A stretch of 64,000 bases of DNA, taken from Ranitomeya imitator. Taxonomy: Eukaryota. The DNA lies in NCBI RefSeq assembly GCF_032444005.1, contig NC_091283.1:132184001-132248000 (forward strand), written 5' to 3'. Below the pieces are notes generated by a model, which saw nothing but the letters and a program-made list of their open reading frames with translations, did not search any database and was not told the DNA's origin. Position 1 is the stretch's first letter. Each line of letters begins with the position of its first letter. Both the position numbers and the translations under genes were made by a program. This document shows, piece by piece, positions 3,361-47,837 of this stretch.

Positions 3361-3414
3361 TGCTCAGCGGAATAATAGAGGCTGGAACAGTTGGCAGGTG
3401 GATGTGATGGCATC

Positions 3415-7435: not shown

Positions 7436-9634
7436 ATGAAGACTGACACTAACCAGATGAAGGATGTCTATGACGCCAATGGTTTCCTGACTGAAGTTGA
7501 TGTATTAGATGAGAAGGAATTGCACCTTGCTCAGAAGGAACATATGAAGCTGGAAGAGAAGTTTGGTAAGTTTCCAGTTTACATTGCATTGAGGGATCTG
7601 TCGGCTTTATTGCACATTTATCCATGATGATCAGAATATTTTTTCAAAAAAGAATATATTTGAGTTGAAGAAATAATATATCTACATATGTGCTAATCAC
7701 TGCGGTCATGATCTAATTCCCATATATCTTATCTTTCAGGTAAAGAGTACACTCAGTACAATCTACACAACATCCACATGCAGTATGAGTGGGTGATGAA
7801 TTTCGCCGCCCATCCCAATCTACTGAAAGCTATCACCGCGGTATTGGGCCCTAACGTCATCCTTTTAGACTCAAGATTTATCTGTAAATATCCCTCCTCT
7901 GAGGTTCCACACAAAGATAACACTCCCCCCTACGTCGCTTGGCATCAGGATATCAAGTGAGTATGGAAGCTGGTAGATAATAATTAAGATCTTCTTATAA
8001 ATATAGACCCAAAACAGTATTTCCTTACATTGTTACAGATACTGGGGGTTTGAAGGAGGACCAGTGGCTTCCGTATGGCTGGCATTTGATGATGTTGATG
8101 CAGAAAATGGAGTCCTACAAATCATTCCAGGTATGCTCTTGCATTGGCTTTTTCTCTAATTGCTAAATGTAAAAATACTAAAACATATTCTTTTTTTGTA
8201 TATGAATTTACATTAAAACTTCTATGCATTGTTTGTCATGTGTAACACCCCAGGGAGTCATAAACAAGGTATTCTGGAGCACAGGATCGCTGAGATCCCC
8301 GGGAACATGCTGACCGCAAACCAGGAGATCCCAGAACACCTGGTGAATGTAGAAGATCTGGTTGAGTGTCCTCTTAAAGCTGGTCAAATGTCTGTAAGTG
8401 CAAAATAATCCTACAGAGTCGTTACACGGATGTGCTTATTAAATGATGCAGAATGGAATTATTGTCATTCGTGTCCCTTAATATTTGACAGTGAAATTCA
8501 TTTTGTGTGGCTGTCTGTACGCAGAGCACCACTGCTTCTGTTACAGATTCATCTTATGTACTGAAACAATAGAAATGTCCTTTTCAGAAATATGTAGTGA
8601 GAAAATCAATCAGTTAAATATAATTTAATGTCTAATAAGCATGAACGGGAATATGCCGTATTGGAGGATACCAGCACTGGATATGTATGAGATGTACGTC
8701 ATGTCCATGATGCTGCCTGCTATATAGATAAATCATCTAGAGTCATCTCGATGGATAAATCCTAATCTCAGAGAAGAATGTATAGATGGACAAATATTAG
8801 AATCTATGACTAGTCAGCAGAAATTGAAACCTGTTGATGAGGAGTTTCCATGTAAAGTTTCCATGTAATTGGCCAAGTGCAATGTGTAAGACTTGTGTAT
8901 TGAACAACCTCTCCATCATCCATACTGACAGGTCCATGATGGTCTGACTGTACATGCCAGTGAACCCAACATGTCAGACAGAAGAAGATGCGGATTTGTC
9001 ATCCGTTATGTTCCTACGACAGCTTATCCTGTTGAGGTAAGCAATCAAACCCAGAAGATTGAATATGATTTCAAAACCACAAGCTAAAAGGAGTAACAAC
9101 AAGCCACAAAAAAGGATATACATATAATATTTATTATAAAAATCACAATAAAATCAGATTAGACATAGTACATATGAACATAGTACATACAAATGGAGGA
9201 GACATGAAGGTAGGCAAGGGATGGGTTCAGGATGAAAATTTGCACCTGGGAAAGCTGGGTAGATAAATATTGTGAATGCAAACAGATATCACCAAATGAA
9301 AGCCTAAATAGCTGCTAATTATGTCTGTAACATGAAAAGCCATAGCACATATCCAGCTGCTTACCCATAATAGGTCCTGACCACTCCTTGCGGCCCCTGA
9401 CGCGCTTTTCGTTCCCTTGCTTTCTCAATGGGGGGTAGATAGCCAATATGAATATGATTGCAGCCTGTAATCCTGCTGAAGAGAAATGATCACTCTTCTC
9501 TTACACCATTTGTGCTTCTTTTCCAGGACCCAGAACGTCCCAGGACTTTTCCTGCAACTGTATTGGTGGCTGGAACAGATGAATATAATCACTTTAAAGA
9601 CAACGCTCCGAATTTCTTCACCAAAACGTTTTAA
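7436..9634 (+). CDS. PhyH-family Fe(II)/2-oxoglutarate-dependent dioxygenase, 263 aa, 6 coding exons
   Basis: Exons 7436-7565, 7740-7956, 8039-8130, 8254-8393, 8932-9036, 9527-9634. All introns are GT..AG, phases are consistent and the total is 792 nt with no internal stop. Motifs: WHQD (HxD), VHAS (distal His), RRCGFVIRY (2OG-binding Arg). PolyA-type signals ATTAAA/AATAAA at ~9920-9970. Confidence 0.92.
9105..9450 (-). mobile_element. Possible Penelope-like pseudo-LTR remnant in intron 5
   Basis: The minus strand near 9395-9435 reads CCCC-AUUGAGAA-AGC..GAAA-AGCGCG-UC-AGGGG, a degenerate hammerhead-like layout. Confidence 0.3.
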
Positions 9635-10141
9635 GAGCTTAGTAACACTGTGCTGTATTATGTCTGTGAGGTCCATAACCATTTATTCATACGGTCGTAA
9701 TTCACATCAATCTGCGGAATAATACATAGAATCCGTTGTATCAGTCATTACAGAAGTGTCTTATGTTCCTCATGTATATTCTGTGACTCCTCTCGGACAT
9801 TCTGCACATCACTTTATAATCTTATTCGCACTTATGAAGATAAACATTGTTCTAATCTGTAATATTTCCAGACTGAGCTGGAATATGTGAATGTGACATT
9901 GTGATGTAAAATGTTAACTTATTAAACTTTATTGTTTTGTTACTTTTTATAACCTGCTGTAAAATAAACTGTGTGTGAAGTAAATGGAGACAATTGTGGT
10001 ATTTACTTTCTAGAACAATTCATGCAAATGGGAGAGAAATAGATTCTGAGACTCCATTGCAGCACACTGGCCGGTGCGGTGACTACACTGCGAGGCTGAC
10101 TAATTGCTGGCAAACAGGAATAATCGCCGGCTCCACCTTTA

Positions 10142-10610
10142 GGCCGGCGTCACACTAGCGTATTGCATCCGATGCGAGATCATCGGATGCGATATGCTAA
10201 TGACCCTCGGCTCCTGCTCACAGCAGAGCAGGGGCCGAGTGTCATGCGTCTGTGCTCCGATTCTCTCGCACAGGGAGGATCGGAGCACAGCTGCGGAGGA
10301 GGCGGAGAAATGAATTTCTCCATCTCCTCCATTGCTGGGGTCCGCTTATAGCGCACATCACTCGGATGTTATCCGAGTGGTGTGCGCTGTCTCACTCGCA
10401 CCCATAGGCTTATATGGGTGCGAGTGAGCCGAGAGTTTTCCTCGGTCCAAGACAATCGCAGCATGCTGCGATTGTCTCGGACCGAGGAAAACGGCCGACA
10501 AAAAGTCGGCTGCTGGGAGCGGCCCCATATGTTAACATTGGTCCGAGTGCAATGCGATTTTTTTTATCGCATTGCACTTGGCCGTTTTAAACGCCAGTGT
10601 GACGCCGGCC
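10142..10610. mobile_element. PIF/Harbinger-type MITE
   Basis: TIR GGCCGGCGTCACACT...AGTGTGACGCCGGCC with a 3-bp TTA target duplication on both sides. Confidence 0.88.
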
Positions 10611-14454: not shown

Positions 14455-15298
14455 GGCGTCCTTCACACATCTGTGTTTCCAGTACATGTGGTATCTACCA
14501 CAACAAACCCATTATAACCTATAGGGCTGTTCACATGTCTGTGTTTTTACACAGACCGCGTGGCCATACAAAACACGCAGAGACATGTCAGTTTTTTTCT
14601 GGCAGCAGGATGACAAGGGCTAATACAAGTCTATGGGTCCATGAAAAACACAGAGTATGATATACTGTGGGGTACACACAATAATTGTATAGTCTCAAGT
14701 AATAGAAGCTCAGTAATAAGCAACCGCTGCAATAAAAGGTATAAACAACAACATGAAATCATCTGAGAAAATCCTACCACCTGTCTCTATGTGTAGATGC
14801 CGATAATAAATATCCTAAGGAAAGCTGGTAACAAACATCACTGGGCGTCCCCATAACAGGTGCGATATGCATGACGTGATCTAAAGAGTTATATACAAAA
14901 AAGTAGAGAAATAGATCACCAATTTATGGTAGTATCTCCAGAGGGAACAAGATAGAAAGGTACGTGCTATATGCATAACAGGTAAGTATGAGCATAATAG
15001 GACCACTAATAATGCAGGGGGCTGTAACTTGCCTCTTACTCATTCAGGGGAGTTGTCATTTTGCAATTTCTATGTGGTTTTAAATTATTTTATTATGGTT
15101 GTATGTCCCATTGGTGTTCACTAAAATTGTGTATTTTATTGCATATTAGGTGTGCACATGCCATATGCATTGGTCTTTCTCTCTTCCTTATTACTGATAG
15201 TAAAAACGGACACACGGATGACACACTGATGGAAAACAATGATGACACCGGTACTAGTTTTTCACGTATGTGTTTTCTATAGACGTGTGAAGGAGGCC
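14455..15298. mobile_element. Harbinger-type MITE interrupted by unrelated AT-rich sequence (~14660-15200)
   Basis: Ends GGCGTCCTTCACAC...GTGTGAAGGAGGCC, flanked by TGA/TAA. Confidence 0.55.
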
Positions 15299-15364
15299 TA
15301 AGAGGGAGTGTGAGGCATAATTCCATGTATAAGGGCAGTGAGACCATGAGAGAGTATGTAAGAG

Positions 15365-17480: not shown

Positions 17481-17599
17481 TAGTTCTGGACTATTGTATC
17501 CTCAGTGTGGTGGATTGTTTCTGGACCTTTTAGTTTTGCCTATAATAAAGGTCTTGGGATTGTTCACACTTCCCTCGCTCTGTTGATTGTGTGGTATCA

Positions 17600-18414: not shown

Positions 18415-18807
18415 TGCCTAGACCAGTCCATGGCAATTGTTTGTACACATGGAATATAGTCATGCATTGGTGTGTATCATTACTGCACACAAGAATATAC
18501 ACTGCTGTATGTATATACACTCACCAAGTAAATGTACCGTAAATATGATACATGCTCTTTGTGAGTGTCTAGTATAGACCTATTGAATGTAAATAAGTAC
18601 TGTATATTTTCATTAGATAGTGGTTTATTTGTCTTTAGAAGTACCAAGGCTGTGTATATTCTTGTGTAAGCTTCAGGTGCTTTGCTAGGGTCCTAAAACA
18701 TAAGGGACCTAATCTCCCCATATCACACTACCTCTACAATCTATACATATAATTATGGTATTCAACTATTCCTAACGCTAAAATATAATATACAAAGACC
18801 AATATAA

Positions 18808-19590: not shown

Positions 19591-19871
19591 TTACCAAGAT
19601 TACTACTGTACAAGGCCAAAATAATACCGCTACACAATGATGCTCCCTCTCCCATCATTCCCCGCTCTCCCTCTAACACTGTGGGTGCACCTGTGTGTCC
19701 CAGGCAGACTGCAGCCGCCGAGACAGGAGCAGGGAGCAGCGCGGGCAAGAGGAGAGGTGAGGAGAATGTTTTTTTGTTTTTTTTTACTGGACTGTGGGAC
19801 CATTATCGGGGGAGGGGGGGAGAGGAGATATGAGATGTGGGCTGTGCTAGTCTGTCATTGCCTCAGTTACA

Positions 19872-24371: not shown

Positions 24372-27300
24372 TTAACTCAACTTGAGCACGGCTTTAACCA
24401 TTTCCCCAATGCCATCAAATATCTCGTGTAGCGGGCTGTTACTCATGAAGGCGCACGTCGTGACCAGCTTATTCTTCACATCTATGTGGACTTCGTGGAC
24501 CTGTTTGTTGACATGTTTACAGCCCAGCTGTTCAATGGCTCCTGCCGTTCCTGCATATGGCCACCTGGAGAATAGACAGAGGTCAGCAAGTTACATCAGT
24601 GACAAAACCAAGGCGACAACAATTCATGTAACTAAAGCTGACCATGCATAGTAGATGGGCGTATCATGCTTCAGCCTATTGTTCTCGGCCATTTCTTCCT
24701 TACACAAGATCGCTCCTGTGTCTTCTACAAGCCACCACCAAGTATCATGTCTGCCGGAGGCCAACCTCCAGGAGGACAAAACAATCTACAGTCTAAAATC
24801 AAACATGCCCGATCGTCAGCTCCTGAGACAATCAGCTGTCTGGCGCCAACATACATAATAGTTGGTCCCCTCAACCTGAAAAGTTCAGTGGGTTTGACCA
24901 ACAATATTCTAATGTATATGGGTGCGGGTGTTTAAGACTCTCCAAAAGGATGAGCACAAGTGACAACTGTACATAGTTGTGGTCAAATCAGGCAAGATCT
25001 AGAAATCAAAGACAAACCACAAAACACACCACTTTAATCCCTTTCTACTCTAGCACTGATGCGCAGGGCTTCCCACTGGTCTTTATTTTTCCTCCAGTGA
25101 GATGCTGTATGTTGCCGCCATAAATAATTACCGGCCTTAGAAATTAAGCCAAGTTGTATGCCAGTAATAAGCTACAGCGGCCACATGGATATACATCACA
25201 TAATTGCTCTAGAAAAAGGTTGCCAATGACCACAGACTCTAGAGTGACAGGGATTCTAGAGTGACACAGAAACAGGTAATGTTAGTTTGTGTTTTTCCCC
25301 TGACATTTCCTGCATATAATCCCCCCACCCTTCAGCTCTTTGACAATGCCTTTAAACCATTTTACAGGGTTTTAACATAAAAAAACCAAAGGCTAAATAA
25401 TCATTAGGTAGAAAGATAGATAAACATTTGTTAGAGTCACTGACTTGTCACACTCTTTATCCGACCCAACCGTGACTTCACATCCTGGTAGAATTTTGGC
25501 AGCTAATACGGGTGAGATACAACACAAGCCAATGGGCTTCTTGGCATCATGAAATCCTCTTATAGCGTCTTCAATGGGTTTTATTACGGAGCAGTCCTTC
25601 CCTTGAGTTGCCCAAGTAGAAAGATTTTTAGCAACTCCAAAACCTCCTGGTAAAGAGAAGAAAAAAAAAAGTGTAAGAAGTCTCTGAAGTATACAACGTA
25701 TTCTTCTTACCATGGTTAGGATAATGCCATACAGTACCTGGTATGATGATTGCATCAAATTGACTGACTTTTAGATCCTTAAGATCTTTCACGTTTCCTC
25801 TTGCAATGCGAGCACTCTCTGTTAGCACGTTCCGTTTCTCCTCGGAGGGTTGGCCTTTTACATGGTCCACCACGTGCATCTGGTCTATGTTAGGTGCAAA
25901 CGCAACGTACTGTGGGAAATAGGAGAACGGGACCTCAGTGAGCCAAACAAAGCGTCCATTGGTTATAGAAAGCAACATATTTAAGGGATATATTGCATTT
26001 TAGGAAATTATTGAAAACCTTATTAGACAAAACCTGTACTCGTATGACTTTTTTTTGACTAGCACAGTAATTTGCAGATGCAAGTTCTCAAGAACACTCA
26101 GAATTCTTCCTCAGTGATGGCACGTTGTTACAGTGATAAGGGGAAAGGCCAGCAGAGAGATTCCCCATGGTTATATTGTTAGAAAAAAGGGCATGCGTTG
26201 TAGACTAAGGGCACAATGCTGTAAAATATATTTCACACAGGAGTTTTGTAAAGGATACAATATTTAAAATGAGTGTATCTTCAAAAGTGTTCCATATCTA
26301 CAGTAATTGTAACACACAGGAACACTAACAAAAGAAAAAAAATGATATATATGTACAACATTAATAAAACAATCCCAACTATTTCTCCCCTTTTTTTCCT
26401 GAGAAATACAGAAATCTTCTGTAGGAGTCTCAGGGCTCGGCCGCATCCCTCCTCATCCGCTTTTGTGTAGCGGATAGGTAAATGGCTGCAGCAGAAGCCG
26501 CTCAGTCAGCAGCTAAGGTTGGGGCTCACAGCGTCAGATTATGTCCTAGTTCTTCAAGAATGACTGAGTGACAACTGCTGCATTTAATTTAAAACGTTCC
26601 TTTCTAAGTCTAGCATCCCTTTAAAGGAACACATTAAAGGAGTCACGATAATATTTATGTGAGGGTCTCAGTGCTTTTACATACATCAATGGATCTTTAC
26701 TGGAAGAACAACTACTTGAAAATTAAAGTGATGTTAGAGGACATCTGCAAGGAGTTTGTATGTTCTCCATGTGTTTGCTCCAATTTCCTCCCACATTACA
26801 AAGATCTACGGATATGGAAATGAGATTGAGAGCCCCAATGAGGACGAGGATTATAATACCTATAATGCACTGCGGAATTAATGGCGCTATATAAGCGAAT
26901 AAAATAAATTAAAAAGATAGAAAGTCTAACGTTTTATTTCACTATGCGTCAGCCATCACTATCATATGTACAGCACATACAGTGACATTACTGGTCTGCG
27001 TCTTCTGCTGTTCCCAGCGCTGCTCCGGTCCCTCTCCTGCATCATGTGACCGCAGCTCTTCCTCGCCGGCTCTCTCACACACCAGACCGTTAGTTCATCT
27101 GTTAATGCAAATCTCTGAGAGCCTCATAAATGTACACCGAGAAAGTGGCTTCTGGTCCACACAGGAGATGTGGTGTGAGGCGGATAGTCACAGCTGTGGG
27201 CATTTGATCCAGGAGAGGAACGAACCAGCGCTGGAAACGGCAGAAGACGGCAAATGGTATTTTATCTTATGAATGCACTGTACATATATTACTAATAGCT

Positions 27301-27745
27301 AACAGATGGTGAAAGAACATGCTGGAACAGTACTATAAAGTTAGATTCAGTGTAGCTATTCTGTGTATATCACATTTACTGCTTTCCATCTAGAATAATC
27401 CATTCATTGACCATTACATACAATGTAAGCCTCTTCCTGCCCTCACTGAGTGTTGGCACATGGCTTCTCCTGTAAGATTTGGAGAAGTAAGTTCGGAAAT
27501 GTAACTACAGAGACTTTTCTCAGACTGTTGTGTAAAGTTACATCACCAGAAAAAACTGTAACAAAGCTCAGTATTTGCTAAGAATCTGCGTTTTGCATGT
27601 GACCCCCACATAAGGCTTCACCCCTCCTCCACCTTACCTGTGCCCCATCTCTGCTCAGGTGGACAAACACTGCAGAGGACTCGTGGATCTCACTGCCATC
27701 ATACACCCCACAGCCACAGAGGATCACAGCCACCTGCCTGCTCAT
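24372..27745 (-). CDS. GATD3: ES1/GATD3-like protein (class I glutamine amidotransferase-like, DJ-1/PfpI superfamily), 224 aa, 4 coding exons, no mitochondrial leader
   Basis: Exons (minus) 27745-27638, 25909-25738, 25646-25445, 24564-24372. GT..AG introns, 675 nt open. Motifs [52 protein letters not shown] at ~24322-24327. It is probably a paralogue rather than the GATD3A orthologue. Confidence 0.92.
26747..26905 (+). mobile_element. Degenerate SINE fragment in intron 1 of the ES1-like gene
   Basis: GAGTTTGTATGTTCTCC..TTTCCTCCCACAT..GAGCCCCAAT..GGCGCTATATAA, matching the body and tail of 23416-23680. Confidence 0.7.
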
Positions 27746-27818
27746 GGTGAATACAGGGGAATGGAGACCTCAGGAGCAGAAGAGTCCAGATAATGAGGGA
27801 GAACTGCTGCTCCTGGGC

Positions 27819-29591: not shown

Positions 29592-30493
29592 CTAAGAAAA
29601 AAAGTTGCATATCTGCACTACCCCATAGCAGAACATTGATCCAAGTGCTACCTAATAGCACTCAGCCGTGTTATACGCTCATGTGAATGTGGCCTTAGGC
29701 TACGTTCCCATAATGAGCAATTGGCAAGTTTTTGATGTTGCAGGTTTTCTGTATTTAAGTAAATTAGGTTACTTGCATTTTTTTCATTGCATTTTCAAGT
29801 GAGTTTTTTGCATGTGCTTTTAGGGTATGTGCACAAGTCAGGATTTTGTGCAGAAATTTCCTGAACAAAACCGGAGATTTTCTGCATGAAATCCGCACAC
29901 GTTTTTCTCCTGTTTTACTCGCGGTTTTGTCACGGTTTTTGTGCGGATTTTTTGCGTTTTTTTCCGGAGCTTCCCAATGCATTAAATAGCGGGAAATCCG
30001 CGATAAATCTGCATAATTAATGAACATGCTGCGTATTTTTCTACAATGCGTTTTTATCACAGAAAAATTTGCAGCATTTGCACAAAAATTGTGGAATGCA
30101 TTCAAAATGTTGGGATGCTCAATGTTAAACTAGAAGAAGAGGGGACGGGAAGAAAAACTTTAGACTCGAACAAAGACGACCCAGGAAAACATACTCTGAA
30201 GGGAGGTAAGAACATTTCTAAAACAATCCACAGTGAGGAGATTGGAACAAAACAAAATCCTCTAAACTGCATGCTCGCAAACGCCAGAAGCCTGACAAAC
30301 AAGATGGAAGAACTAGAAGCAGAAATATCTACAGGTAACTTTGACATAGTGGGAATAACCGAGACATGGTTAGATGAAAGCTATGACTGGGCAGTCAACT
30401 TACAGGGTTACAGTCTGTTTAGAAAGGATCGTAAAAATCGGAGAGGAGGAGGGGTTTGTCTCTATGTAAAGTCTTGTCTAAAGTCCACTTTAA

Positions 30494-31754
30494 GGCCATG
30501 TTCACACAGTGCGTTTTTTACCGCGGAACCGCGGCGGTTTTGCCGCTGCGGTTCCGCAGCTGTTTTCCATGCAGGGTACAGTACACTGTACCCTATGGAA
30601 AACAGGACACACTGTGCACATGGTCCGGAAATTGTAAAAAAAAAGCCGCGCTGAATAGCTCCCGGAAAAAAGAAGGAGCATGTCAATTCTTCTTCCTGAA
30701 CCGCAGCGGTTCTGCACCCATAGACCTCCATTGTGAGGTCAAAATCGCAGTAAAACACGCAGATCAAAAATATATCTGCGGGTTTTACTGCGATTTGATG
30801 TGCAGAACCGCTGCAGCAGGAAGTGCGGGGGAGCGGGCGGAAGTGCGTGGGCGGAGTGTGGCTGCCCCCCCGTGCTCCGATCCCGCCCCCGTGCTCCGAT
30901 GCCCCCCTCCCCCGTGCTCCGATGCCCCCCCCAGTGCTCCGATGCCCCCCCCGTGCCCTAATCTCCCCCCCTTATACTTACCCGGCGTCCCGGTGTCCGT
31001 CCGGCCGTCTTCTCCCTGGGCGCCGCCATCTTGCAAAATGGCGGGCGCATGCGCAGTGCGCCCGCCGAATCTGCCGGCCGGCAGATTCGCTCCAAAGTGC
31101 ATTTTGATCACTGAGATATAACCTATCTCAGTGATCAAAATAAAAAAATAGTAAATGACACCCCCCCCACTTTGTCACCCCCATTGGTAGGGACAATAAA
31201 AAAAATTAAGAATTTTTTTTTTTTTTCACTAAGNNNNNNNNNNNNNNNNNNNNNNNNNNNNNNNNNNNNNNNNNNNNNNNNNNNNNNNNNNNNNNNNNNN
31301 NNNNNNNNNNNNNNNNNNNNNNNNNNNNNNNNNNNNNNNNNNNNNNNNNNNNNNNNNNNNNNNNNNNNNNNNNNNNNNNNNNNNNNNNNNNNNNNNNNNN
31401 NNNNNNNNNNNNNNNNNNNNNNNNNNNNNNNNNNNNNNNNNNNNNNNNNNNNNNNNNNNNNNNNNNNNNNNNNNNNNNNNNNNNNNNNNNNNNNNNNNNN
31501 NNNNNNNNNNNNNNNNNNNNNNNNNNNNNNNNNNNNNNNNNNNNNNNNTAGCCCTAAAAAGCTTCCTAGAAAACACAGTCTCTGCATAGAAAACTGCATA
31601 AAAAAAGGATAAAAAAACGCATCAAAAAACGCATCAAAAAAGGACAAAAAAAGGACCAAAAAAAGGACCTGCGTTTTCTGCCAAGAGCTGCAGTTTTTTA
31701 AAAAAACTGTCCTGAAAAAAAAAGGATGGAAATCCTGAACGTGTGAACATACCC
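30494..31754. mobile_element. Compound Harbinger-type MITE insertion containing an assembly gap
   Basis: TAA TSD (30491-30493 / 31755-31757), TIR GGCCATGTTCACAC...GTGTGAACATACCC. An unrelated GC-rich repeat fragment lies at ~30810-31233. Confidence 0.8.
31234..31548. other. Assembly gap (315 N)
   Basis: Run of N. Confidence 1.
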
Positions 31755-34645
31755 TAAGGGAGGATATTAGCGAAGGGAATGAGGATGTCGAGTCCATATG
31801 GGTTGAAATTCATGGAGGGAAAAATGGTAACAAAATTCTCATTGGGGTCTGTTACAAACCCCCAAATATAACAGAAAGCATGGAAAGTCTACTTCTAAAG
31901 CAGATAGATGAAGCTGCAACCCATAATGAGGTCCTGGTTATGGGGGACTTTAACTACCCGGATATTAACTGGGAAACAGAAACCTGTGAAACCCATAAAG
32001 GCAACAGGTTTCTGCTAATAACCAAGAAAAATTATCTTTCACAATTGGTGCAGAATCCAACCAGAGGAGCAGCACTTTTAGACCTAATACTATCTAATAG
32101 ACCTGACAGAATAACAAATCTGCAGGTGGTCGGGCATTTAGGAAATAGCGACCACAATATTGTGCAGTTTCACCTGTCTTTCACTAGGGGGACTTGTCAG
32201 GGAGTCACAAAAACATTGAACTTTAGGAAGGCAAAGTTTGAACAGCTTAGAGATGCCCTTAATCTGGTAGACTGGGACAATATCCTCAGAAATAAGAATA
32301 CAGATAATAAATGGGAAATGTTTAAGAACATCCTAAATAGGCAGTGTAAGCGGTTTATACCTTGTGGGAATAAAAGGACTAGAAATAGGAAAAACCCAAT
32401 GTGGCTAAACAAAGAAGTAAGACAGGCAATTAACAGTAAAAAGAAAGCATTTGCACTACTAAAGCAGGATGGCACCATTGAAGCTCCAAAAAACTATAGG
32501 GAGAAAAATACTTTATCTAAAAAACTAATTAAAGCTGCCAAAAAGGAAACAGAGAAGCACATTGCTAAGGAGAGTAAAACTAATCCCAAACTGTTCTTCA
32601 ACTATATCAATAGTAAAAGAATAAAAACTGAAAATGTAGGCCCCTTAAAAAATAGTGAGGAAAGAATGGTTGTAGATGACGAGGAAAAAGCTAACATATT
32701 AAACACCTTCTTCTCCACGGTATTCACGGTGGAAAATGAAATGCTAGGTGAAATCCCAAGAAACAATGAAAACCCTATATTAAGGGTCACCAATCTAACC
32801 CAAGAAGAGGTGCGAAACCGGCTAAATAAGATTAAAATAGATAAATCTCCGGGTCCGGATGGCATACACCCACGAGTACTAAGAGAACTAAGTAATGTAA
32901 TAGATAAACCATTATTTCTTATTTTTAGTGACTCTATAGCGACAGGGTCTGTTCCGCAGGACTGGCGCATAGCAAATGTGGTGCCAATATTCAAAAAGGG
33001 CTCTAAAAGTGAACCTGGAAATTATAGGCCAGTAAGTCTAACCTCTATTGTTGGTAAAATATTTGAAGGGTTTCTGAGGGATGTTATTCTGGATTATCTC
33101 AATGAGAATAACTGTTTAACTCCATATCAGCATGGGTTTATGAGAAATCGCTCCTGTCAAACCAATCTAATCAGTTTTTATGAAGAGGTAAGCTATAGGC
33201 TGGACCACGGTGAGTCATTGGACGTGGTATATCTCGATTTTTCCAAAGCGTTTGATACCGTGCCGCACAAGAGGTTGGTACACAAAATGAGAATGCTTGG
33301 TCTGGGGGAACATGTGTGTAAATGGGTTAGTAACTGGCTTAGTGATAGAAAGCAGAGGGTGGTTATAAATGGTATAGTCTCTAACTGGGTCGCTGTGACC
33401 AGTGGGGTACCGCAGGGGTCAGTATTGGGACCTGTTCTCTTCAACATATTCATTAATGATCTGGTAAAAGGTTTACACAGTAAAATATCGATATTTGCAG
33501 ATGATACAAAACTATGTAAAGCAGTTAATACAAGAGAAGATAGTATTCTGCTACAGATGGATCTGGATAAGTTGGAAACTTGGGCTGAAAGGTGGCAGAT
33601 GAGGTTTAACAATGATAAATGTAAGGTTATACACATGGGAAGAGGGAATCAATATCACCATTACACACTGAACGGGAAACCACTGGGTAAATCTGACAGG
33701 GAGAAGGACTTGGGGATCCTAGTTAATGATAAACTTACCTGGAGCAGCCAGTGCCAGGCAGCAGCTGCCAAGGCAAACAGGATCATGGGGTGCATTAAAA
33801 GAGGTCTGGATACACATGATGAGAGCATTATACTGCCTCTGTACAAATCCCTAGTTAGACCGCACATGGAGTACTGTGTCCAGTTTTGGGCACCGGTGCT
33901 CAGGAAGGATATAATGGAACTAGAGAGAGTACAAAGGAGGGCAACAAAATTAATAAAGGGGATGGGAGAACCACAATACCCAGATAGATTAGCGAAATTA
34001 GGATTATTTAGTCTAGAAAAAAGACGACTGAGGGGCGATCTAATAACCATGTATAAGTATATAAGGGGACAATACAAATATCTCGCTGAGGATCTGTTTA
34101 TACCAAGGAAGGTGACGGGCACAAGGGGGCATTCTTTGCGTCTGGAGGAGAGAAGGTTTTTCCACCAACATAGAAGAGGATTCTTTACTGTTAGGGCAGT
34201 GAGAATCTGGAATTGCTTGCCTGAGGAGGTGGTGATGGCGAACTCAGTCGAGGGGTTCAAGAGAGGCCTGGATGTCTTCCTGGAGCAGAACAATATTGTA
34301 TCATACAATTATTAGGTTCTGTAGAAGGACGTAGATCTGGGTATTTATTATGATGGAATATAGGCTGAACTGGATGGACAAATGTCCTTTTTCGGCCTTA
34401 CTAACTATGTTACTATGTTACTATGTTACTACGTATGCAAACGCGAAAAATCCGGAACGTGTGCACATACCCTCACTGCCGAGGTTTTTGTCTCTTGTTA
34501 GCATGTTTTTTTGTTGTTGTTTTTTTTTAAAATCTGCTTTCTTTTTTATTCTTCCTTTTATTTGGGTTTGACAAAACTTAATTGATACAGTCATATGTGG
34601 ATTACATGTGCTTTGATGCATTTCCGCTGGGAAAACACACTGTTA

Positions 34646-42657: not shown

Positions 42658-45600
42658 TTATTGGAGCAGTAGTGGAAGCTGTGAGCTATCTCTGATACTT
42701 TCTAGATTTTCTACCATCTGTATTACAGCCTGAATTTGGTCTTTCTGTAGGATATCTCCAGCATTGGACAAGAATTTCTTCAGCAGAGATTCTCGGCTCA
42801 AAGGTTTCCTCCAGTGCCCATAAAAAGTGTCACATTTTCCTATGATCACATCTCCATTTTTGAGCAGGAGGGCCACTTCTCCATACATCTTATCAAAGTT
42901 GGCTTCATTGTCCTGTGGGTGCTCCACTACCACTTTGCTCAGGAGATTATGGATTTCCTTACGAAACATTTTGTCGTCGTGGAAAGACTTAATGTTGACT
43001 TCTCCATCCAGTAGTGCCGTACAGGCATTGTACTGGAAGGAGTGACGAGCCTGATGTTCAGAGTCAGGGTAGGGTCTATTGATGTATTTGGAGACTGGAA
43101 TTTTAAGAACAATAGTCTGAATGGCAGATGGGTTGAATGATCCATACTGCTCTTCAAACCTGCTCCTCACCGAGACGGCAGCATTCACTATCCAGTGCAT
43201 TCCGAGATGGGCTGGGAAAGACTTGAAAGCAATGTCTTGCTTCTCAAGAAGAAACTTGTACTGCTTTCCAGGTGAAGCAAGAGCTTTAGGCTGGTAATCA
43301 CCATAAAAAGCACTAAAACCAGAGCATCCAGGCACATCATCAAGTATGAGAGAGTTGGCCTCCATACCATTAGCAGCCAGAATGGCGGCTTCCAGACCTA
43401 ATCTAGTAGCATTGCCGATGTGTAATGGCTTAGCTAGAGTGGCAGCATTTGCCATCGGAGCACCAGCAAGAGAGGCTGCGATCGCCAGGGCATGGGTACA
43501 TTGATCTTTGTCTAGTGCAAGAAGTTTGGCTGAAGCTGCTGCACTTCCCATGGTGCCAACGACAGAAGGTGGATGAAACCTGTAGTAAGAAAACAGCAGT
43601 TCATGAATTATTTCCAATATATTAAGCAATGTAACATAATTTTCTTAACCAGTAGGGCTAACTACTCACTTTTTAGGAATATTCTTTGCTTCACTGGAGA
43701 AACTCATCAGTCTTCCTTGAATTTCAATCCCCACATTGAAAGCTGTCAGGAGATCTTCACCACTGACTCTTCTGTCATTTGAAAGCATCTGAGACAGCGC
43801 CAGGATGGCAGGAAGCACAGCGCCTGATGGGTGGGTGGCAGGGTGCCATGTATCATCAAAGTCCATAGAGTGTACCTGGGAGAATGGGCAGATTAGCTAT
43901 ATAAGCTTTATTTTGTGCTGTGATTCAAAGGGTTCTCCAGTATTGTGATAAGTCTGCAGTCACTTCTGAATCCTTACAGCGCTCACACTGCATGCTGTCA
44001 GGATTCTCCGGTGTTACCAGTAAAAGCAGGCGGTCATGTGACCGTATGTGTGTAATTAGCATACTTCCAGCCACATTCTAACTAGACGTACTTGACTTCG
44101 TTCAATACAAGTCAATTGTGCTAGGCCGTGCATCTAGTCGGCATGTGAGCACATTTGTGCAAATCGCATACTCGTGGTCACATGCCTGCCTGCTTTTACC
44201 GGCAACATCGGAGAATCCTGACATTGTAAAGTGTGTACGGCGTTAGGATTCAGACATCTGAAGTCACATATCCATGTCTCAGCCCCTACCTCATCTTGCC
44301 CTCAGATTACGTTGCAAAATCCTGCTGACAGATACCTTTTATTGAGATAATAAAATCAGAGTGACTGCAGACTTTTATTACAAGATCAGACAATCCCTTT
44401 CATAATTGATTAATAATTAATACTGATTATTATCTAAGAGTTCCGATTACTATGCCTCTTTTTTTTTATATATATGTGGCGCCCCAGGGTCCTGGTCATC
44501 ACAGTGGCATTGCTTTCCTCACGGGGAGAGTGATGTCAAGCTTGGAGGCAAGGAAGTATAACTTTCACCAGGTAAACACAAACATGCAACATGTTCACAC
44601 TCCAGGTCACAAGGGGGAGCTCTGATCCTGCTTATGGGTGGCTCCCATATATATATATATTGTGGTTTGGAGGAAAAGTGAGTCAGATAGTGCCAGACAG
44701 CAGACTGGCAGACTGGATCAGTCTGAGGCAGGAAGACGTGTGAGGGGCCGTTCAGCCTGATGTGTTGCAGCCCCTGGGTAGTGAGACTTAGAAAGACGAA
44801 CAGACTTGCAGTGAATGTGCAGGAGAGGGAAGCACGGGCGAGTGACATCTGGGGAGGACAGCTGCGACTGGGCTACCTCCCTGACATAGCGCAGATACCA
44901 GTAGCTGGAAGACCGAGGTTGTGAGGGACTCTAAGACTTACAGCAGAAACCGGCAGGACAGCTAGATTATTACAAGTAACCTGTCCACCCTAACACCCAG
45001 GAGACACAGTGGCACATAGAGCCCGGGTCGTGATAGAGACCCTGTAAAAAGGCTCGAGTCACCTGTCATACGGGTTTGTGTCCTAACCTTCATGGAGGAC
45101 AAAGAGAACTGTGAGGACCTTGCCAGAAGCCATAGGCAGTAAGGGACTACAATACCACCACGCTTAGAGGAAGGCTTTCATCTCCACCTGGTGAAGGGGA
45201 CTCCCAACTTGCTTCCAAGCCGGCCGGACCCTGCCTGTACCTGTGATCTGGTGTCCTGGAGTGCGGTTGCCTGAAGCTACAGTAAATCAGGTAAAGAGAC
45301 TGCAAACCTGTGTACTCATTCTTTACTGCATCATTCACCATTTCCATCTACACATGGGAGCCCTGGGGACCTACTTCACCTGTGGGAAGTTATACCATCT
45401 AGCTGCCATACCATTACCCCAGAGGACCCCTTTAAGCAGCGTCGTTTCCCACTGACCGAATACCACAGGTGGCGTCACATAAACTTTAATCAATATCCCT
45501 TTTTCATGGGCGCCCAGGGCCACGGACCGGGTCGCCACCGTAACACGTCCCCTTAAGTACTGGACCCGGGACCTAGTGCCCCACGGCTCTGGCGGGCGTT

Positions 45601-46646
45601 CCATATACTTACAGCAACACCATTAGCATAGGCCGCCAGGGTCGGTGAAAGCTTTAAACCTTTTTGACCGTAGACAGAACAAAAGGCAGAATTTCCAAAG
45701 GATGAGAAGTGCAGGTCCTACAATATGGAATAATGCACAGAATCATGTAACCATTACAATATTTCTATGATAAATATACAATTATAGATACAACCTCTGT
45801 CACACTTGTGTAATGAAGAATGACAGACCTGATACATGTTCTTCAATACTTCCAACATTTACAATATAACACTACCTTACACCTGTGTCTGGGGAGCATC
45901 TATTTCAGTATAATTTGGAAAGTATATTACAAGAATATATTGTTCTTGTAGAAAGGTCTAGGTCTATTGCGGTCACAATCTGCTGTATTTGTGTTTAGCC
46001 TTTGCTCCTTCTACGTGCTCCTTTACAATCCCATAGGTCGCGGTTGTTGCTTTACCTGGCAGTATTTCACCACAATCTTGAAGACGTGTGTGTTGCTTCC
46101 AACCAGTCCCACACCAATGTTGTCCAGTATCATGCGTTTACTTCTGTGACGGACAACATCCGACAGATGCTCCGGGCGGATCCCATCGATAAATGATGCA
46201 AAACTGCCGGTTACTGAGTCTTCCAACTGGTTTCCAACAATCACTGGAATTAAACGTATCACATTATTAGCAGTGCGCCGATCCTCTGCTGGTCAGTGGG
46301 ATTCTTACTTTCTTCTTACATTGGTTTAATCTGTGTGTGATACAACGTCTCAGAAAGTCGCTGTCAGCATTACCATCATTCTGGCCGCACGATACAAGGG
46401 CACATGGAGGCAAAGATACAACTTTGGGGGTAACATGAGAACTATTTTATTTACCTTTCACAGCAGACTTGTGAATATGTCTTGATAGTTTATGAACTTT
46501 CTCAGTGTTCTAGAAGAAAGAGAAAACATTGTGACTAGAATATTTGTGGAGAGCACGCGACATTCATATATTTATGCCACATTGGTATAGAATATGCAGG
46601 ATAACTCCTCCAGTGTGAGAAACTGACAACTATGATTCTCCAATTT

Positions 46647-46686
<40 letters not shown>

Positions 46687-47837
46687 TCACATACAACTAA
46701 GTGTTGTGTCGTCCATCTATTATTCTGCCATTATTCTTTTTGTAATTGTAGGAGTCTATTGAGAATTGAGTGTTATCACCCAATAGGACACGTGGTCCAT
46801 GCACGGTGTGACACTGTCAGCACTGACTGAACAGTATCTGGCTGTGTAGAGTTACTCCTTATCAGAGGAATGGTAGCAATAAGTTTTATGCCAGAATTCT
46901 GGCACAAAAATTGCGCAGCAGGGACCTCACTCCTTTTGGTATCTGAGTTATGTTTATTCGGTAATGCCTTTATTGTCTGTACAAGTCTCCCCTAAATTTA
47001 TGTAGCGCTGTGTAATTTGCTGGTGCTATAGAAATAAAAATTATTATTGTTATTATTTTCATGTTTTAATATAAAAATGAAAACAACTGCAATATATCTA
47101 AAATAATAATTATATTAATTATAATTAATCATTCATATATATTAAGTATATATAAATAAGTATACAATAGTATATATTATATACTTAATTATGAAATAAT
47201 TAATATATACAAAATGTATGTAAAAGTATTGCGGATTATTTAGTAAAGTGACAATGATGGTATAGGAAAATCAAGAGACTAGTTAATTTGCTCTAAATTT
47301 AGAAAACTGAATTTGAGTGTAACACTTGATCCGACCAAAGAGGGCGCTCCATCTTCACACCACTTGTAAAATGCAAGTGATTGACATATAAAAAAAATTG
47401 CAATGTATTTGTATACAATTACGGTAGATGAATTTATTTTAACAAAATAAACATTGAATATTTTGGTTAAAATGTTTCAAAATAGCCTGAATTTCCCAAA
47501 TGATTGCAGAAGAAAAAAACGTAGTAAAACAAAATAAATGTGGGAAAATGTGATCTCTTGCTGAAACGCAATTGTGGCATGCATAAAATGATATAACACG
47601 AAACAATGATAATTATACCATGCTGTTTTTGCAAGTTTGAAATATAATATATTTATAGCATGTACACAGGTGCATTTCAGTGTTAGAGAATGAAAATGTG
47701 AAAAATAAGTACATCTATCTAAATATGTATGCATGTCCTTATGGGAAGAAATGTGGGAGAAGAAAGAAAGAAAGTTTTAAGGAAATGAATTGAATACTCT
47801 CATATGTCTCACTTACATTGACGAGTGCAGAAAGCAT
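42658..47837 (-). CDS. ACOD1: cis-aconitate decarboxylase-like (ACOD1/IRG1-like, MmgE/PrpD family), 498 aa, 6 coding exons
   Basis: Exons (minus) 47837-47817 (MLSALVN), 46509-46455, 46243-46056, 45717-45613, 43875-43670, 43579-42658. GT..AG introns, 1497 nt open. Motifs SMDFDDTWHPATHPSGAVLP, FHPPSVVG, AKPLHIGNA, AFKSFPAHLGMHW, KYINRP. The first two small exons are the least certain. It is probably the irg1-like paralogue. Confidence 0.93.
44475..45603 (+). mobile_element. Solo LTR (same family as 11111-12214) in intron 4 of the ACOD1-like gene, antisense to the gene
   Basis: TG...CA termini with a TATA 4-bp TSD; shares GGGGACC..CTTCACCTGTGGGAAG and GACCCCTTTAAGCAGCGTC blocks with the 11111 element. 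Confidence 0.88.

What the first reader, a model, noticed from the sequence alone, without database searches (positions are those of the whole stretch)
7436..47837. Candidate vertebrate immune-metabolic (biosynthetic) gene cluster: PhyH dioxygenase + ES1/DJ-1-like + IRG1-like decarboxylase
Seen: the only intact host genes in the window are three unrelated small-molecule enzymes in series, with only transposons between them. All are spliceable without stops and keep their catalytic motifs (HxD..H..R; Glu and Cys of the DJ-1/PfpI fold; the ACOD1 His/Lys/Tyr motifs). Established: ACOD1/IRG1 makes the antimicrobial itaconate in inflammation; DJ-1/PfpI proteins act on reactive carbonyls; PhyH enzymes hydroxylate or halogenate small acids. 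Inference: a decarboxylase, a tailoring oxygenase and a nucleophilic-Cys enzyme side by side, with inflammatory promoter motifs, look like a co-regulated pathway making or modifying a defensive metabolite. Such clusters are rare in vertebrates. I recall irg1-like and ES1-like transcripts being infection-induced in fish and chicken, but I have not verified this.
Basis: partly seen in the sequence, partly recalled or inferred. Interest (0 to 1): 0.88.

Follow-up and report, generated by a model that had tools for sequence, protein, structure and literature searches.

The report
Conserved infection-induced itaconate gene neighbourhood
Three intact enzyme genes in this poison-frog window (a PhyH-type oxygenase, an ES1/DJ-1-like protein and the itaconate-making decarboxylase IRG1L) belong to an ancient gene neighbourhood that has stayed together from lamprey and sharks to frogs and birds, and whose zebrafish counterparts are switched on together by bacterial infection, so it is a credible, biochemically untested animal metabolic gene cluster.

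Summary
The window, from a dendrobatid-like frog, carries three intact, GT-AG-spliced genes. They are a 263-aa PhyH-type Fe(II)/2OG oxygenase (7436-9634, +), a 224-aa ES1/ElbB-like DJ-1-fold protein (27745-24372, -) and a 498-aa IRG1L cis-aconitate decarboxylase (47837-42658, -). Only transposons lie between them. The N gap sits inside a nested transposon, its flanks are collinear, and no gene is touched.

The trio is part of a larger neighbourhood that also holds a YrdC-domain membrane protein and a VOC/glyoxalase gene. I found members linked within 7-82 kb in lamprey, shark, a teleost, Xenopus and birds, with order and orientation shuffled. In zebrafish infected with Shigella sonnei the orthologues irg1l, zgc:174917, si:ch211-153b23.4 and .5 are induced 8- to 56-fold and sit among the top 50 genes.

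A bioRxiv preprint already drew this synteny but saw "no obvious functionally related gene clustering". No shared product is shown. Two side claims fail: inflammatory promoter motifs are not enriched, and a FANCF ORF also lies in the window. The scan had not reported this before on other DNA.

The parts
7436..9634 (+). PhyH-type Fe(II)/2-oxoglutarate oxygenase gene (orthologue of zebrafish zgc:174917), 263 aa. CDS exons: 7436-7565, 7740-7956, 8039-8130, 8254-8393, 8932-9036, 9527-9634 (stop included).
   Evidence: tblastn with the Ranitomeya, Pseudophryne and Xenopus orthologues. Splice model with GT-AG at all 5 introns. The HxD...H triad and Arg cluster are conserved in the family alignment. 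Closest solved structures are ThoJ 6zyk/6zyl (E 8e-30), then SyrB2 and PHYH. RNA runs hold 0.40-0.45 of the sampled words of the gene span, which fits exons plus UTRs.
24372..27745 (-). ES1/ElbB-like DJ-1/PfpI-fold gene (clade of zebrafish si:ch211-153b23.5), 224 aa, with no N-terminal presequence. CDS exons: 27745-27638, 25909-25738, 25646-25445, 24564-24372 (stop included).
   Evidence: PDB matches to E. coli ElbB (1vhq, 1oy1) and an Es1 family protein (3l3b), E about 1e-12, with the elbow Cys conserved. tblastn with frog orthologues and a GT-AG splice model. In the tree it groups with teleost and chimaera si:ch211-153b23.5 and the sparrow YrdC-adjacent gene (support 87/87), sister to canonical GATD3A/ES1.
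42658..47837 (-). IRG1L (cis-aconitate decarboxylase-like, MmgE/PrpD family) gene, 498 aa. CDS exons: 47837-47817, 46509-46455, 46243-46056, 45717-45613, 43875-43670, 43579-42658 (stop included).
   Evidence: Pfam MmgE_PrpD_N and MmgE_PrpD_C on the exons. 96% identity to Phyllobates 'cis-aconitate decarboxylase-like'. Exon 1 was found by its MLSALVN peptide followed by a GTAAGT donor. The junctions were read directly from the DNA. E 4e-160 to solved CAD structures, with the active-site residues conserved. RNA runs hold 0.62-0.87 of the last-exon words.
30495..31758 (.). TIR (hAT-like or MITE-like) element that contains the assembly gap (N at 31234-31548), inserted into a LINE ORF2. It is intergenic, between the ES1-like gene and IRG1L.
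   Evidence: Terminal inverted repeats ATGTTCACAC / GTGTGAACAT, with similar flanking octamers ACTTTAAG / ACCCTAAG. Excising the element restores the LINE reading frame.
30007..34312 (+). LINE ORF2 (endonuclease plus reverse transcriptase), split by the TIR element above. It shows that the sequence is collinear across the gap.
   Evidence: The left ORF matches Exo_endo_phos profile positions 10-114. The right ORF matches positions 121-225 plus Exo_endo_phos_2 and RVT_1.

Best explanation
The window holds three members of an ancient, loosely packed, infection-inducible gene neighbourhood centred on IRG1L, the mitochondrial paralogue of ACOD1/IRG1 that makes itaconate from cis-aconitate.

The full neighbourhood has five unrelated gene families:
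- IRG1L;
- a PhyH-type Fe(II)/2OG hydroxylase;
- an ES1/ElbB-like DJ-1-fold enzyme without a presequence;
- a large membrane protein with an N-terminal Gpr1/Fun34/YaaH-like (acetate/succinate channel-like) region fused to a YrdC domain;
- a small VOC/glyoxalase-fold protein.

Shown here: the three frog genes are intact with catalytic residues kept. Members stay linked within tens of kilobases from lamprey to birds, although order and orientation change. The zebrafish orthologues are strongly co-induced by bacterial infection.

Shown by others: zebrafish IRG1L is a mitochondrial-matrix cis-aconitate decarboxylase.

Inferred: the genes form a co-regulated functional module around itaconate. IRG1L would make itaconate, the channel-like YrdC protein would move or activate a carboxylate, and the oxygenase, VOC and ES1-like enzymes would modify itaconate (for example by hydroxylation and further conversion) or protect the producing cell from this electrophile and related carbonyls. 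This resembles the way fungal itaconate clusters combine a decarboxylase, transporters, an oxygenase (Cyp3) and a putative ring-cleaving dioxygenase (Rdo1).

My confidence of 0.68 is for 'conserved and co-regulated module'. For 'one biochemical pathway acting on itaconate' I would give about 0.35-0.4.
For: Gene models and motifs.

Linkage in other species:
- Astyanax CM033901.1: IRG1L 1.770-1.776 Mb (-), YrdC-like 878 aa 1.778-1.784 Mb (+), ES1-like 1.809-1.814 Mb (+), PhyH-like 1.816-1.821 Mb (-).
- X. laevis CM030354.1: IRG1L.b 36.589-36.593 Mb, YrdC-like 36.622-36.629 Mb, two PhyH-like genes 36.631-36.642 Mb.
- Heptranchias CM068651.1: VOC ending near 29.752 Mb, PhyH-like 29.761-29.769 Mb, IRG1L 29.828-29.833 Mb.
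- Lamprey: PhyH-like, then YrdC-like (912 aa) 7 kb downstream.
- Chicken: YrdC-like, IRG1L, VOC, EXOC1.
- Elephant shark: YrdC-like, IRG1L, EXOC1.
- Song sparrow: YrdC-like next to ES1-like.
- Phyllobates: a 224-aa DJ-1_PfpI gene about 9 kb downstream of IRG1L.

Co-induction in S. sonnei-infected zebrafish larvae (log2 fold change): si:ch211-153b23.3 +6.04, irg1l +5.81, zgc:174917 +5.68, si:ch211-153b23.4 +4.05, si:ch211-153b23.5 +3.08, all with padj below 1e-12. Four of them are in the top-50 heat map (PMC6980646).

Other expression evidence:
- The hub genes of one WGCNA module are irg1l, si:ch211-153b23.3 and si:ch211-153b23.5 (PMC11140123).
- Across 18 exposure conditions r = 0.86-0.90 with irg1l (PMC8877790).
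- The same frog RNA runs X1, X2, X4 and X7 hold both the IRG1L and the PhyH-like exons.

The preprint 10.1101/2022.06.17.496652 reports VOC, YrdC, 2OG-Fe(II)-oxygenase and GAT genes syntenic with IRG1L and with invertebrate pIRG1. It also shows that zebrafish IRG1L is a matrix enzyme that makes itaconate.

YrdC-like gene: the YrdC domain is on the 3' exons. The N-terminal 506-aa exon looks like Gpr1/Fun34/YaaH: atlas score 0.86 with 202 shared features, and weak precomputed Pfam hits.

Fungal analogy: PMC6064134.
Against: - No biochemical link between the enzymes is known. The substrate of the PhyH-like enzyme is unknown, and the ES1/ElbB family has only vaguely defined activities.
- The authors of the only synteny study saw 'no obvious functionally related gene clustering'.
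- EXOC1, an unrelated housekeeping gene, is also a conserved neighbour in chicken and elephant shark, so some passive synteny retention occurs here.
- Co-induction is shown in whole zebrafish larvae, where 283 genes go up, and not in this frog. Unlinked genes such as sult5a1 correlate equally well.
- Compartments may differ. IRG1L has an N-terminal extension (matrix-located in zebrafish), while the ES1-like and PhyH-like proteins start directly at the catalytic core.
- The composition varies. No PhyH-like gene was seen in the bird loci sampled, and the nearest X. laevis IRG1L copy has no partner within 10 kb.
- Phyllobates has the ES1-like gene on the opposite strand relative to IRG1L.
- No enrichment of NF-kB, ISRE, STAT, AP-1 or C/EBP motifs upstream of the three genes.
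Confidence: 0.68

Rival explanations
1. Shared regulatory landscape without a shared pathway. The genes stay together and respond together only because they sit in one inflammation-responsive chromatin domain, with shared or interdigitated enhancers. Each enzyme would then do an unrelated job: itaconate synthesis, generic carbonyl detoxification, or hydroxylation of some other substrate.
For: EXOC1, which has no metabolic link, is part of the conserved block in chicken and elephant shark. Co-induced genes include many unlinked inflammatory genes. The preprint authors found no functional clustering. The predicted compartments differ.
Against: Order and orientation have been reshuffled repeatedly while membership was kept. 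That is not what enhancer-interdigitation constraints usually give. According to the preprint, the same four partner domains accompany pIRG1 in invertebrates. Three neighbourhood genes are among the ten most induced genes of the zebrafish infection response. A decarboxylase, a channel-like protein, an oxygenase and a VOC enzyme together mirror the fungal itaconate clusters.
Confidence: 0.27
2. Chance adjacency in this frog: three unrelated enzyme genes happen to lie within 40 kb, with no wider meaning.
For: The genes are separated by 15 kb stretches of transposons. In this window there is no operon-like packing and no shared promoter.
Against: The same families are linked in lamprey, sharks, a teleost, other frogs and birds, and they share a chromosome in 17 species.
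Confidence: 0.02
3. Remnant of a bacterial operon: the whole neighbourhood entered an early animal genome in one horizontal transfer and has simply not yet dispersed.
For: All five families are typically bacterial enzyme families. The frog PhyH-like protein is 41% identical over its full length to a bacterial protein. The preprint argues for a prokaryotic origin of animal IRG1.
Against: The bacterial PhyH homologue has no MmgE/PrpD, ElbB, VOC or YrdC neighbour within 10 kb. The only bacterial IRG1L relative recovered (28% identity) has no partners either. Only two kinds of bacterial locus were sampled, so this is a weak test.
Confidence: 0.03

Closest known systems
IRG1L / pIRG1 synteny block drawn by Szeligowski et al. 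(bioRxiv 10.1101/2022.06.17.496652, Fig. 2)
   Same: The gene families next to IRG1L are the same. That paper labels them VOC, YrdC, 2OG-Fe(II) oxygenase and GAT. The last two correspond to the window's PhyH-like and ES1-like genes. It reports IRG1L loss in therian mammals, and shows that zebrafish IRG1L makes itaconate in the mitochondrial matrix.
   Different: The authors used synteny only to establish paralogy and state that they saw no obvious functionally related clustering. Co-induction by infection, the channel-like N-terminus of the YrdC protein, and the reshuffling with retained membership are not discussed there. This frog locus is not in their sample.
Fungal itaconate gene clusters (Ustilago maydis tad1/adi1/mtt1/itp1/ria1 with adjacent cyp3 and rdo1; Aspergillus terreus cadA/mttA/mfsA)
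   Same: An itaconate-forming decarboxylase lies beside transporter genes, an oxygenase that modifies itaconate (Cyp3 makes 2-hydroxyparaconate) and a putative ring-cleaving dioxygenase (Rdo1). All are co-induced during host colonisation (PMC6064134).
   Different: The protein families differ: a 2OG oxygenase instead of a P450, an AceTr-like/YrdC fusion instead of MFS and mitochondrial carriers, and an extra ES1-like enzyme. No cluster-specific transcription factor was seen. The genes are tens of kilobases apart and interspersed with transposons. No product beyond itaconate is known in animals.
Mammalian ACOD1/IRG1 locus
   Same: A paralogous enzyme with the same reaction and active-site residues, which is also infection-induced. 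Zebrafish acod1 rises by log2FC +3.79 in the same data set.
   Different: According to the preprint, the ACOD1 paralogue has a different set of neighbours and usually lacks a mitochondrial presequence. It is a stand-alone gene, not part of this enzyme neighbourhood.
ThoJ / SyrB2 / proline- and leucine-hydroxylase branch of the PhyH family, and E. coli ElbB / vertebrate GATD3A (ES1)
   Same: The PhyH-like protein shares the fold and the 2-His-1-carboxylate motif with these bacterial tailoring oxygenases. The ES1-like protein shares the ElbB/ES1 core and the elbow Cys.
   Different: The PhyH-like protein is only 24-26% identical to ThoJ and has HxD, so it is of the hydroxylase type and not the SyrB2 halogenase type (HxA/G). 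The ES1-like protein lacks the presequence of mitochondrial GATD3A and falls in a separate gnathostome clade.

Membership tests
MmgE/PrpD family, cis-aconitate decarboxylase, IRG1L clade | MmgE_PrpD N- and C-terminal domains | tested here: met
   PF03972 and PF19305 match the exon translations, E 1e-9 to 3e-37.
MmgE/PrpD family, cis-aconitate decarboxylase, IRG1L clade | The eight CAD active-site residues (human numbering D93, T97, H103, H159, K207, K272, H277, Y318; the list is recalled from the published CAD structure paper) | tested here: met
   The alignment of the 96%-identical orthologue to solved CAD (7br9, 6r6t) places all of them in conserved motifs. The same motifs are present in the window protein: MDFDDTWHPATHP, KFHPPS, AKPLHIGN, AFKSFPAHL, KYINRP.
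MmgE/PrpD family, cis-aconitate decarboxylase, IRG1L clade | Orthology to IRG1L rather than ACOD1 | tested here: met
   The best matches are 'cis-aconitate decarboxylase-like' or 'immunoresponsive gene 1, like' proteins from frogs to sharks, at 61-96% identity. The neighbours are the YrdC/VOC/PhyH/ES1 set that the preprint assigns to IRG1L. I built no tree for this gene.
MmgE/PrpD family, cis-aconitate decarboxylase, IRG1L clade | Decarboxylation of cis-aconitate to itaconate | not testable with these tools
   Shown in vitro for zebrafish IRG1L by the preprint, not for the frog enzyme.
PhyH family of Fe(II)/2-oxoglutarate oxygenases | PhyH domain and double-stranded beta-helix fold | tested here: met
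   The single exons gave no Pfam hit. All orthologues carry PF05721. The family profile hits ThoJ at E 8e-30, then SyrB2, PHYH and EctD. The AF2 model (pLDDT 67, pTM 0.72) matches ThoJ, SyrB2 and SnoN.
PhyH family of Fe(II)/2-oxoglutarate oxygenases | HxD...H iron triad and the Arg that binds 2OG | tested here: met
   H112, D114, H201 and R211/R212 are invariant in 18 sequences and present in the window protein. Assigning H201 as the distal iron ligand is by analogy with EctD and PHYH.
SyrB2-type halogenases (the name NCBI gives some orthologues: 'L-threonyl-carrier protein 4-chlorinase') | The carboxylate ligand replaced by Ala or Gly (HxA/G) | tested here: not met
   The motif is WHQD, with Asp invariant. 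The chlorinase name is an annotation artefact.
DJ-1/PfpI superfamily, ES1/ElbB subfamily | ElbB/ES1 core with the nucleophile-elbow Cys and the N-terminal GxGxxDGSE motif | tested here: met
   E 2e-12 to ElbB (1vhq, 1oy1) and 7e-12 to an Es1 family protein (3l3b). The Cys in GLCCISP aligns with the Cys of ElbB GFMCIAP, and exon 1 carries [13 protein letters not shown].
Canonical mitochondrial GATD3A/ES1 | N-terminal mitochondrial presequence and membership of the GATD3A clade | tested here: not met
   The protein starts at the core ([13 protein letters not shown]). In the tree it sits in the sister clade with si:ch211-153b23.5-type genes, support 87/87. No targeting predictor was run.
Metabolic gene cluster (non-homologous enzyme genes of one pathway, adjacent and co-regulated) | Physical adjacency of three or more non-homologous enzyme genes | tested here: met
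   Three genes within 40.4 kb with only transposons between them. The adjacency is loose, with 15 kb spacers.
Metabolic gene cluster (non-homologous enzyme genes of one pathway, adjacent and co-regulated) | Adjacency conserved across lineages | tested here: met
   Lamprey, two cartilaginous fishes, a teleost, three other frogs and two birds.
Metabolic gene cluster (non-homologous enzyme genes of one pathway, adjacent and co-regulated) | Co-regulation | tested here: inconclusive
   Strong for the zebrafish orthologues in published data. For this frog I can only say that the same RNA runs contain IRG1L and PhyH-like transcripts. The read-laying run failed.
Metabolic gene cluster (non-homologous enzyme genes of one pathway, adjacent and co-regulated) | The enzymes act in one pathway | not testable with these tools
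   No product beyond itaconate is known. The pathway is an inference from the mix of enzyme families and the fungal analogy.

The most novel reading that the evidence does not exclude
Non-mammalian vertebrates, and perhaps bilaterians generally, keep a five-gene, infection-induced metabolic gene cluster that turns mitochondrial itaconate into an as yet undescribed derivative, such as a hydroxylated or lactonised product, or exports it. On this reading the pathway was lost as a unit in therian mammals, leaving only stand-alone ACOD1. The cluster might even descend from a single bacterial gene-cluster transfer.
Probability: 0.25. Interest if true: 0.9.

Novelty: new variant of a known kind. Interest (0 to 1): 0.72.

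Why it matters
Itaconate is one of the most studied immunometabolites, but nearly all of that work is on mammals, which have only the stand-alone ACOD1 gene. If the IRG1L neighbourhood is a working module, fish, amphibians, reptiles and birds have extra, unexplored itaconate chemistry or itaconate-handling machinery. That machinery would comprise an oxygenase, a VOC enzyme, a DJ-1-fold enzyme and a channel-like YrdC protein, all switched on within hours of infection.

This would be one of very few metabolic gene clusters in animals. It would assign functions to four orphan gene families. It would also point to candidate new antimicrobial or signalling metabolites, which matters for amphibian skin defence and fish health.

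The hypothesis is directly testable with existing zebrafish and Xenopus genetics and LC-MS.

Tried and rejected
- Pfam on single PhyH-like and ES1-like exons gave nothing. Family assignment needed PDB and homologue searches instead.
- The YrdC-like and VOC genes were sought in the window with exon translations from Astyanax, Xenopus, chicken and sharks. There were no hits, so they lie outside the 64 kb.
Splicing and expression of that gene in this species are therefore not shown by reads.
- Bacterial-operon origin. The neighbourhood of a bacterial PhyH homologue and the one bacterial IRG1L relative found by the genome-contig scan contain none of the partner families. The idea is not supported, and the sampling was thin.
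- Promoter motif enrichment (NF-kB, C/EBP, AP-1, STAT, ISRE/IRF) within 1 kb upstream of each gene was not above the window background.
- A literature search by PDB code 6ZYK/6ZYL was useless. The name ThoJ came from the fold search.
- Searches for 'hypophosphite dioxygenase' together with aconitate decarboxylase, and for chytrid-infection data, gave nothing usable.
- My first automatic splice optimiser for IRG1L fell into a wrong frame. The junctions were then read by eye from the DNA and verified.
- Chance adjacency was rejected on the synteny evidence.
- The halogenase reading of the PhyH-like gene was rejected because the HxD motif is present.

Full report
**What is in the window**

The best protein matches are to dendrobatid frogs. 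The spliced IRG1L product is 480/498 identical to Phyllobates terribilis and 471/498 to Ranitomeya imitator. The window is therefore a piece of a poison-frog-like genome rich in transposons. Six-frame ORFs and tblastn with orthologues gave three complete gene models.

1. A PhyH-type oxygenase on the + strand. It has six exons from the ATG at 7436 to the stop at 9634, every intron is GT-AG, and the product is 263 aa. It differs at only a handful of residues from the Ranitomeya protein P0367.
2. An ES1/ElbB-like DJ-1-fold gene on the - strand. It has four exons from 27745 to 24372, the introns are GT-AG, and the product is 224 aa.
3. IRG1L on the - strand. It has six coding exons from the ATG at 47837 to the stop at 42658, and the product is 498 aa. 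The seven-codon first exon (MLSALVN followed by GTAAGT) was found upstream, because the second exon begins right after a polypyrimidine tract and an AG.

**Catalytic residues**

- The IRG1L protein keeps the motifs that hold all eight active-site residues of mammalian cis-aconitate decarboxylase. I mapped them through the alignment of the 96%-identical orthologue to solved CAD structures (E about 4e-160). The residue list itself is from my memory of the CAD structure paper.
- The oxygenase keeps an invariant WHQD...VHAS...RRR pattern across 18 vertebrate and bacterial relatives. It is therefore a hydroxylase-type enzyme (HxD). It is not the chlorinase that some automatic names suggest.
- The ES1-like protein keeps the DGSE motif and the elbow cysteine that aligns with E. 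coli ElbB.

**The assembly gap**

The N run at 31234-31548 is intergenic, between the ES1-like gene and IRG1L. It lies inside an element with terminal inverted repeats (ATGTTCACAC ... GTGTGAACAT) and similar flanking octamers. That element is itself inserted into a LINE ORF2.

Removing positions 30495-31758 joins the LINE frame exactly (..SCLKSTL|REDISEG..). The LINE pieces to the left and right of the insertion match profile positions 10-114 and 121-225 of the same endonuclease domain. The two sides of the gap are therefore collinear and in the same orientation, and the gap affects none of the three genes.

**What lies between and around the genes**

The spacers are transposons and repeats:
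- the LINE described above;
- a Tc1-like HTH fragment;
- repeat arrays near 15-17.5 kb and 19.8-21 kb;
- two Ty3/gypsy elements beyond IRG1L.

The claim that the three are the only host genes is not quite right. A 309-aa FANCF ORF lies at 3391-4320 (Pfam E 6e-57), which another first-stage note had flagged.

The claim of inflammatory promoter motifs did not survive a count against the window background. There is no strict NF-kB or ISRE site within 1 kb upstream of any gene, and only single STAT-, AP-1- or C/EBP-like matches at about the background rate.

**Which families the genes belong to**

- IRG1L is the 'immunoresponsive gene 1, like' paralogue found from sharks to monotremes.
- The oxygenase belongs to a small family. 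Only 89 cluster representatives reached E 1e-3 among 1.8 billion. The family is present in lamprey, sharks, ray-finned fishes and amphibians (zebrafish zgc:174917) and carries inconsistent automatic names. Its closest solved relative is ThoJ, a bacterial tailoring monooxygenase (profile E 8e-30; Foldseek E 1e-13, TM about 0.6, on a model of only moderate confidence). SyrB2, SnoN/SnoK and the proline and leucine hydroxylases follow. PHYH (1e-16) also matches, and PHYHD1 only weakly (2.5e-11).
- The ES1-like protein has no presequence. In a tree of 32 sequences it sits with teleost and chimaera si:ch211-153b23.5-type genes and a sparrow gene (87/87 support), as sister to canonical GATD3A/ES1.

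| Species | Arrangement |
|---|---|
| Astyanax (teleost), one chromosome | IRG1L 1.770-1.776 Mb (-); an 878-aa YrdC-domain gene 1.778-1.784 Mb (+); ES1-like 1.809-1.814 Mb (+); PhyH-like 1.816-1.821 Mb (-). All within 51 kb, with PhyH and ES1 convergent as in the window |
| Xenopus laevis | One IRG1L copy 36.589-36.593 Mb; YrdC-like 36.622-36.629 Mb; two tandem PhyH-like genes 36.631-36.642 Mb |
| Sevengill shark | A VOC/glyoxalase gene, then PhyH-like (29.761-29.769 Mb), then IRG1L (29.828-29.833 Mb), on one chromosome |
| Elephant shark | YrdC-like, IRG1L, EXOC1 |
| Chicken | YrdC-like, IRG1L, VOC, EXOC1 |
| Song sparrow | YrdC-like next to ES1-like |
| Lamprey | PhyH-like 7 kb from a 912-aa YrdC-like gene |
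| Phyllobates | A 224-aa DJ-1_PfpI gene about 9 kb downstream of IRG1L, on the opposite strand to the window arrangement |

This includes a 714-kb Ranitomeya contig. The one mismatch is the polyploid sterlet.

The window trio is thus part of a five-family neighbourhood. Its YrdC-like and VOC members lie outside this window. The YrdC-like gene is odd. Its 3' exons encode the YrdC domain. Its 506-aa first coding exon resembles Gpr1/Fun34/YaaH acetate/succinate channels (weak precomputed Pfam hits; atlas score 0.86 with 202 shared features). That resemblance is a lead and is not established.

**Co-regulation**

I could not test this in the frog.

Published zebrafish data are clear.
- In larvae infected with Shigella sonnei (PMC6980646), the DESeq2 table gives these log2 fold changes: si:ch211-153b23.3 +6.04, irg1l +5.81, zgc:174917 +5.68, si:ch211-153b23.4 (YrdC-like) +4.05 and si:ch211-153b23.5 (ES1-like) +3.08. 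All have padj below 1e-12. Three of them are among the ten largest fold changes listed. The top-50 heat map holds irg1l.4.5 and zgc:174917.
- An independent WGCNA study names irg1l, si:ch211-153b23.3 and si:ch211-153b23.5 as hubs of one module (PMC11140123).
- Across 18 chemical-exposure conditions the .3.4 and .5 genes correlate with irg1l at r = 0.86-0.90. Two unlinked genes do as well (PMC8877790).
- I did not identify what si:ch211-153b23.3 encodes. Its BAC-clone name suggests that it is a neighbour.

**What was already known**

A bioRxiv preprint (10.1101/2022.06.17.496652) analysed IRG1 evolution. It reports the following:
- IRG1L was lost in therian mammals.
- Zebrafish IRG1L is a mitochondrial-matrix enzyme that makes itaconate.
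- Genes with VOC, YrdC, 2OG-Fe(II)-oxygenase and GAT domains are syntenic with IRG1L and with the invertebrate pIRG1 of oyster, amphioxus and lamprey.

[quoted passage not shown] The synteny is therefore not new. I found no paper that joins it with co-induction or proposes a functional module.

**Most likely mechanism**

Shown:
- the three frog genes are intact, with conserved catalytic residues;
- the families stay linked across roughly 500 million years (my estimate from the taxa compared), with order and orientation reshuffled;
- the zebrafish orthologues are strongly co-induced by infection.

Inferred: these genes form a co-regulated module around itaconate. IRG1L would make itaconate in mitochondria. 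The channel-like YrdC protein would move or activate a carboxylate. The 2OG oxygenase, VOC and ES1-like enzymes would either modify itaconate or protect the producing cell from this electrophile and related carbonyls.

The make-up parallels the Ustilago itaconate cluster. There a P450 (Cyp3) converts itaconate to 2-hydroxyparaconate, a putative ring-cleaving dioxygenase (Rdo1) sits next to it, and transporters are part of the cluster (PMC6064134). I give about 0.68 to 'conserved, co-regulated module' and about 0.35-0.4 to 'one pathway acting on itaconate'.

**Rivals**

- Shared inflammatory chromatin domain without shared chemistry (about 0.27). The unrelated EXOC1 is also a conserved neighbour, the predicted compartments differ, and many unlinked genes are co-induced.
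- Chance adjacency is excluded by the synteny.
- An origin by transfer of a bacterial operon has no support in the two kinds of bacterial locus I could inspect, but it was barely tested.

**Verdict**

The finding is incomplete, since it covers three of five families, and the synteny half is anticipated by a preprint. The functional-cluster reading is not in the literature I could search and is readily testable. I rate it a new variant of a known kind of system (a metabolic gene cluster centred on itaconate, known from fungi), with interest about 0.72.

Noticed in passing
window 3391-4320 (+): A 309-aa ORF matches Pfam FANCF over profile positions 1-302 of 346 (E 6e-57). FANCF is intronless in vertebrates as far as I recall, so this could be a real host gene or a retro- or captured copy. 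Another first-stage note calls it Helitron-captured. It contradicts the claim that the three enzymes are the only host genes in the window.
   Followed up: partly
window 50534-55015 (+) and 57647-61975 (-): Two long Ty3/gypsy (chromovirus-type) gag-pol ORFs of 1493 and 1442 aa. They have the same domain order (gag, protease, RT, RNase H, integrase, chromodomain) and lie in inverted orientation about 2.6 kb apart, upstream of IRG1L.
   Followed up: partly
window 15100-17540 and 19830-21070: Long arrays whose translations repeat the same peptide-like unit (for example ..YVYTVLWPSQLRVYCIMAFTATCILYYGLHS..) in several frames and on both strands. This is probably a tandem satellite and not coding sequence. 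The region 20-22 kb has strong GC and AT skew.
   Followed up: no
Phyllobates terribilis locus (no DNA served): The 224-aa DJ-1_PfpI gene lies about 8.7 kb downstream of IRG1L on the opposite strand. In the window the ES1-like gene is 14.9 kb downstream on the same strand. This points to an inversion between related frogs or an assembly difference. The LINE continuity across the window's gap argues that the window orientation is right.
   Followed up: partly
L009:5995-7512 (-) (Astyanax), and the YrdC-like genes in L002, L004, L007 and L015: The 870-960-aa 'YrdC-like' neighbour of IRG1L has a large N-terminal exon resembling Gpr1/Fun34/YaaH acetate/succinate channels, fused to a C-terminal YrdC domain. 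I do not know of this fusion being described. It has no counterpart in the window.
   Followed up: partly
L007:10001-12136 and 18693-21302 (X. laevis): There are two tandem PhyH-like genes (263 aa each) plus a stray match to the first exon at 13511-13642. The preprint reports four IRG1L copies in the same species. The neighbourhood has therefore been locally amplified in Xenopus.
   Followed up: no
L011/L012:10001-10783 (uncultured bacterium with planctomycete-like neighbours): A bacterial PhyH protein is 41% identical over its full length to the frog oxygenase, which is unusually close for a vertebrate-bacterium pair. A second, more distant PhyH gene lies 1.3 kb away.
   Followed up: partly
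L002:18908-21028 (chicken), L010:1-653 (sevengill shark): A small VOC/glyoxalase-fold gene (150-162 aa) is next to IRG1L in chicken and upstream of PhyH-like in the shark. It is the fifth family of the neighbourhood and is absent from the window.
   Followed up: partly
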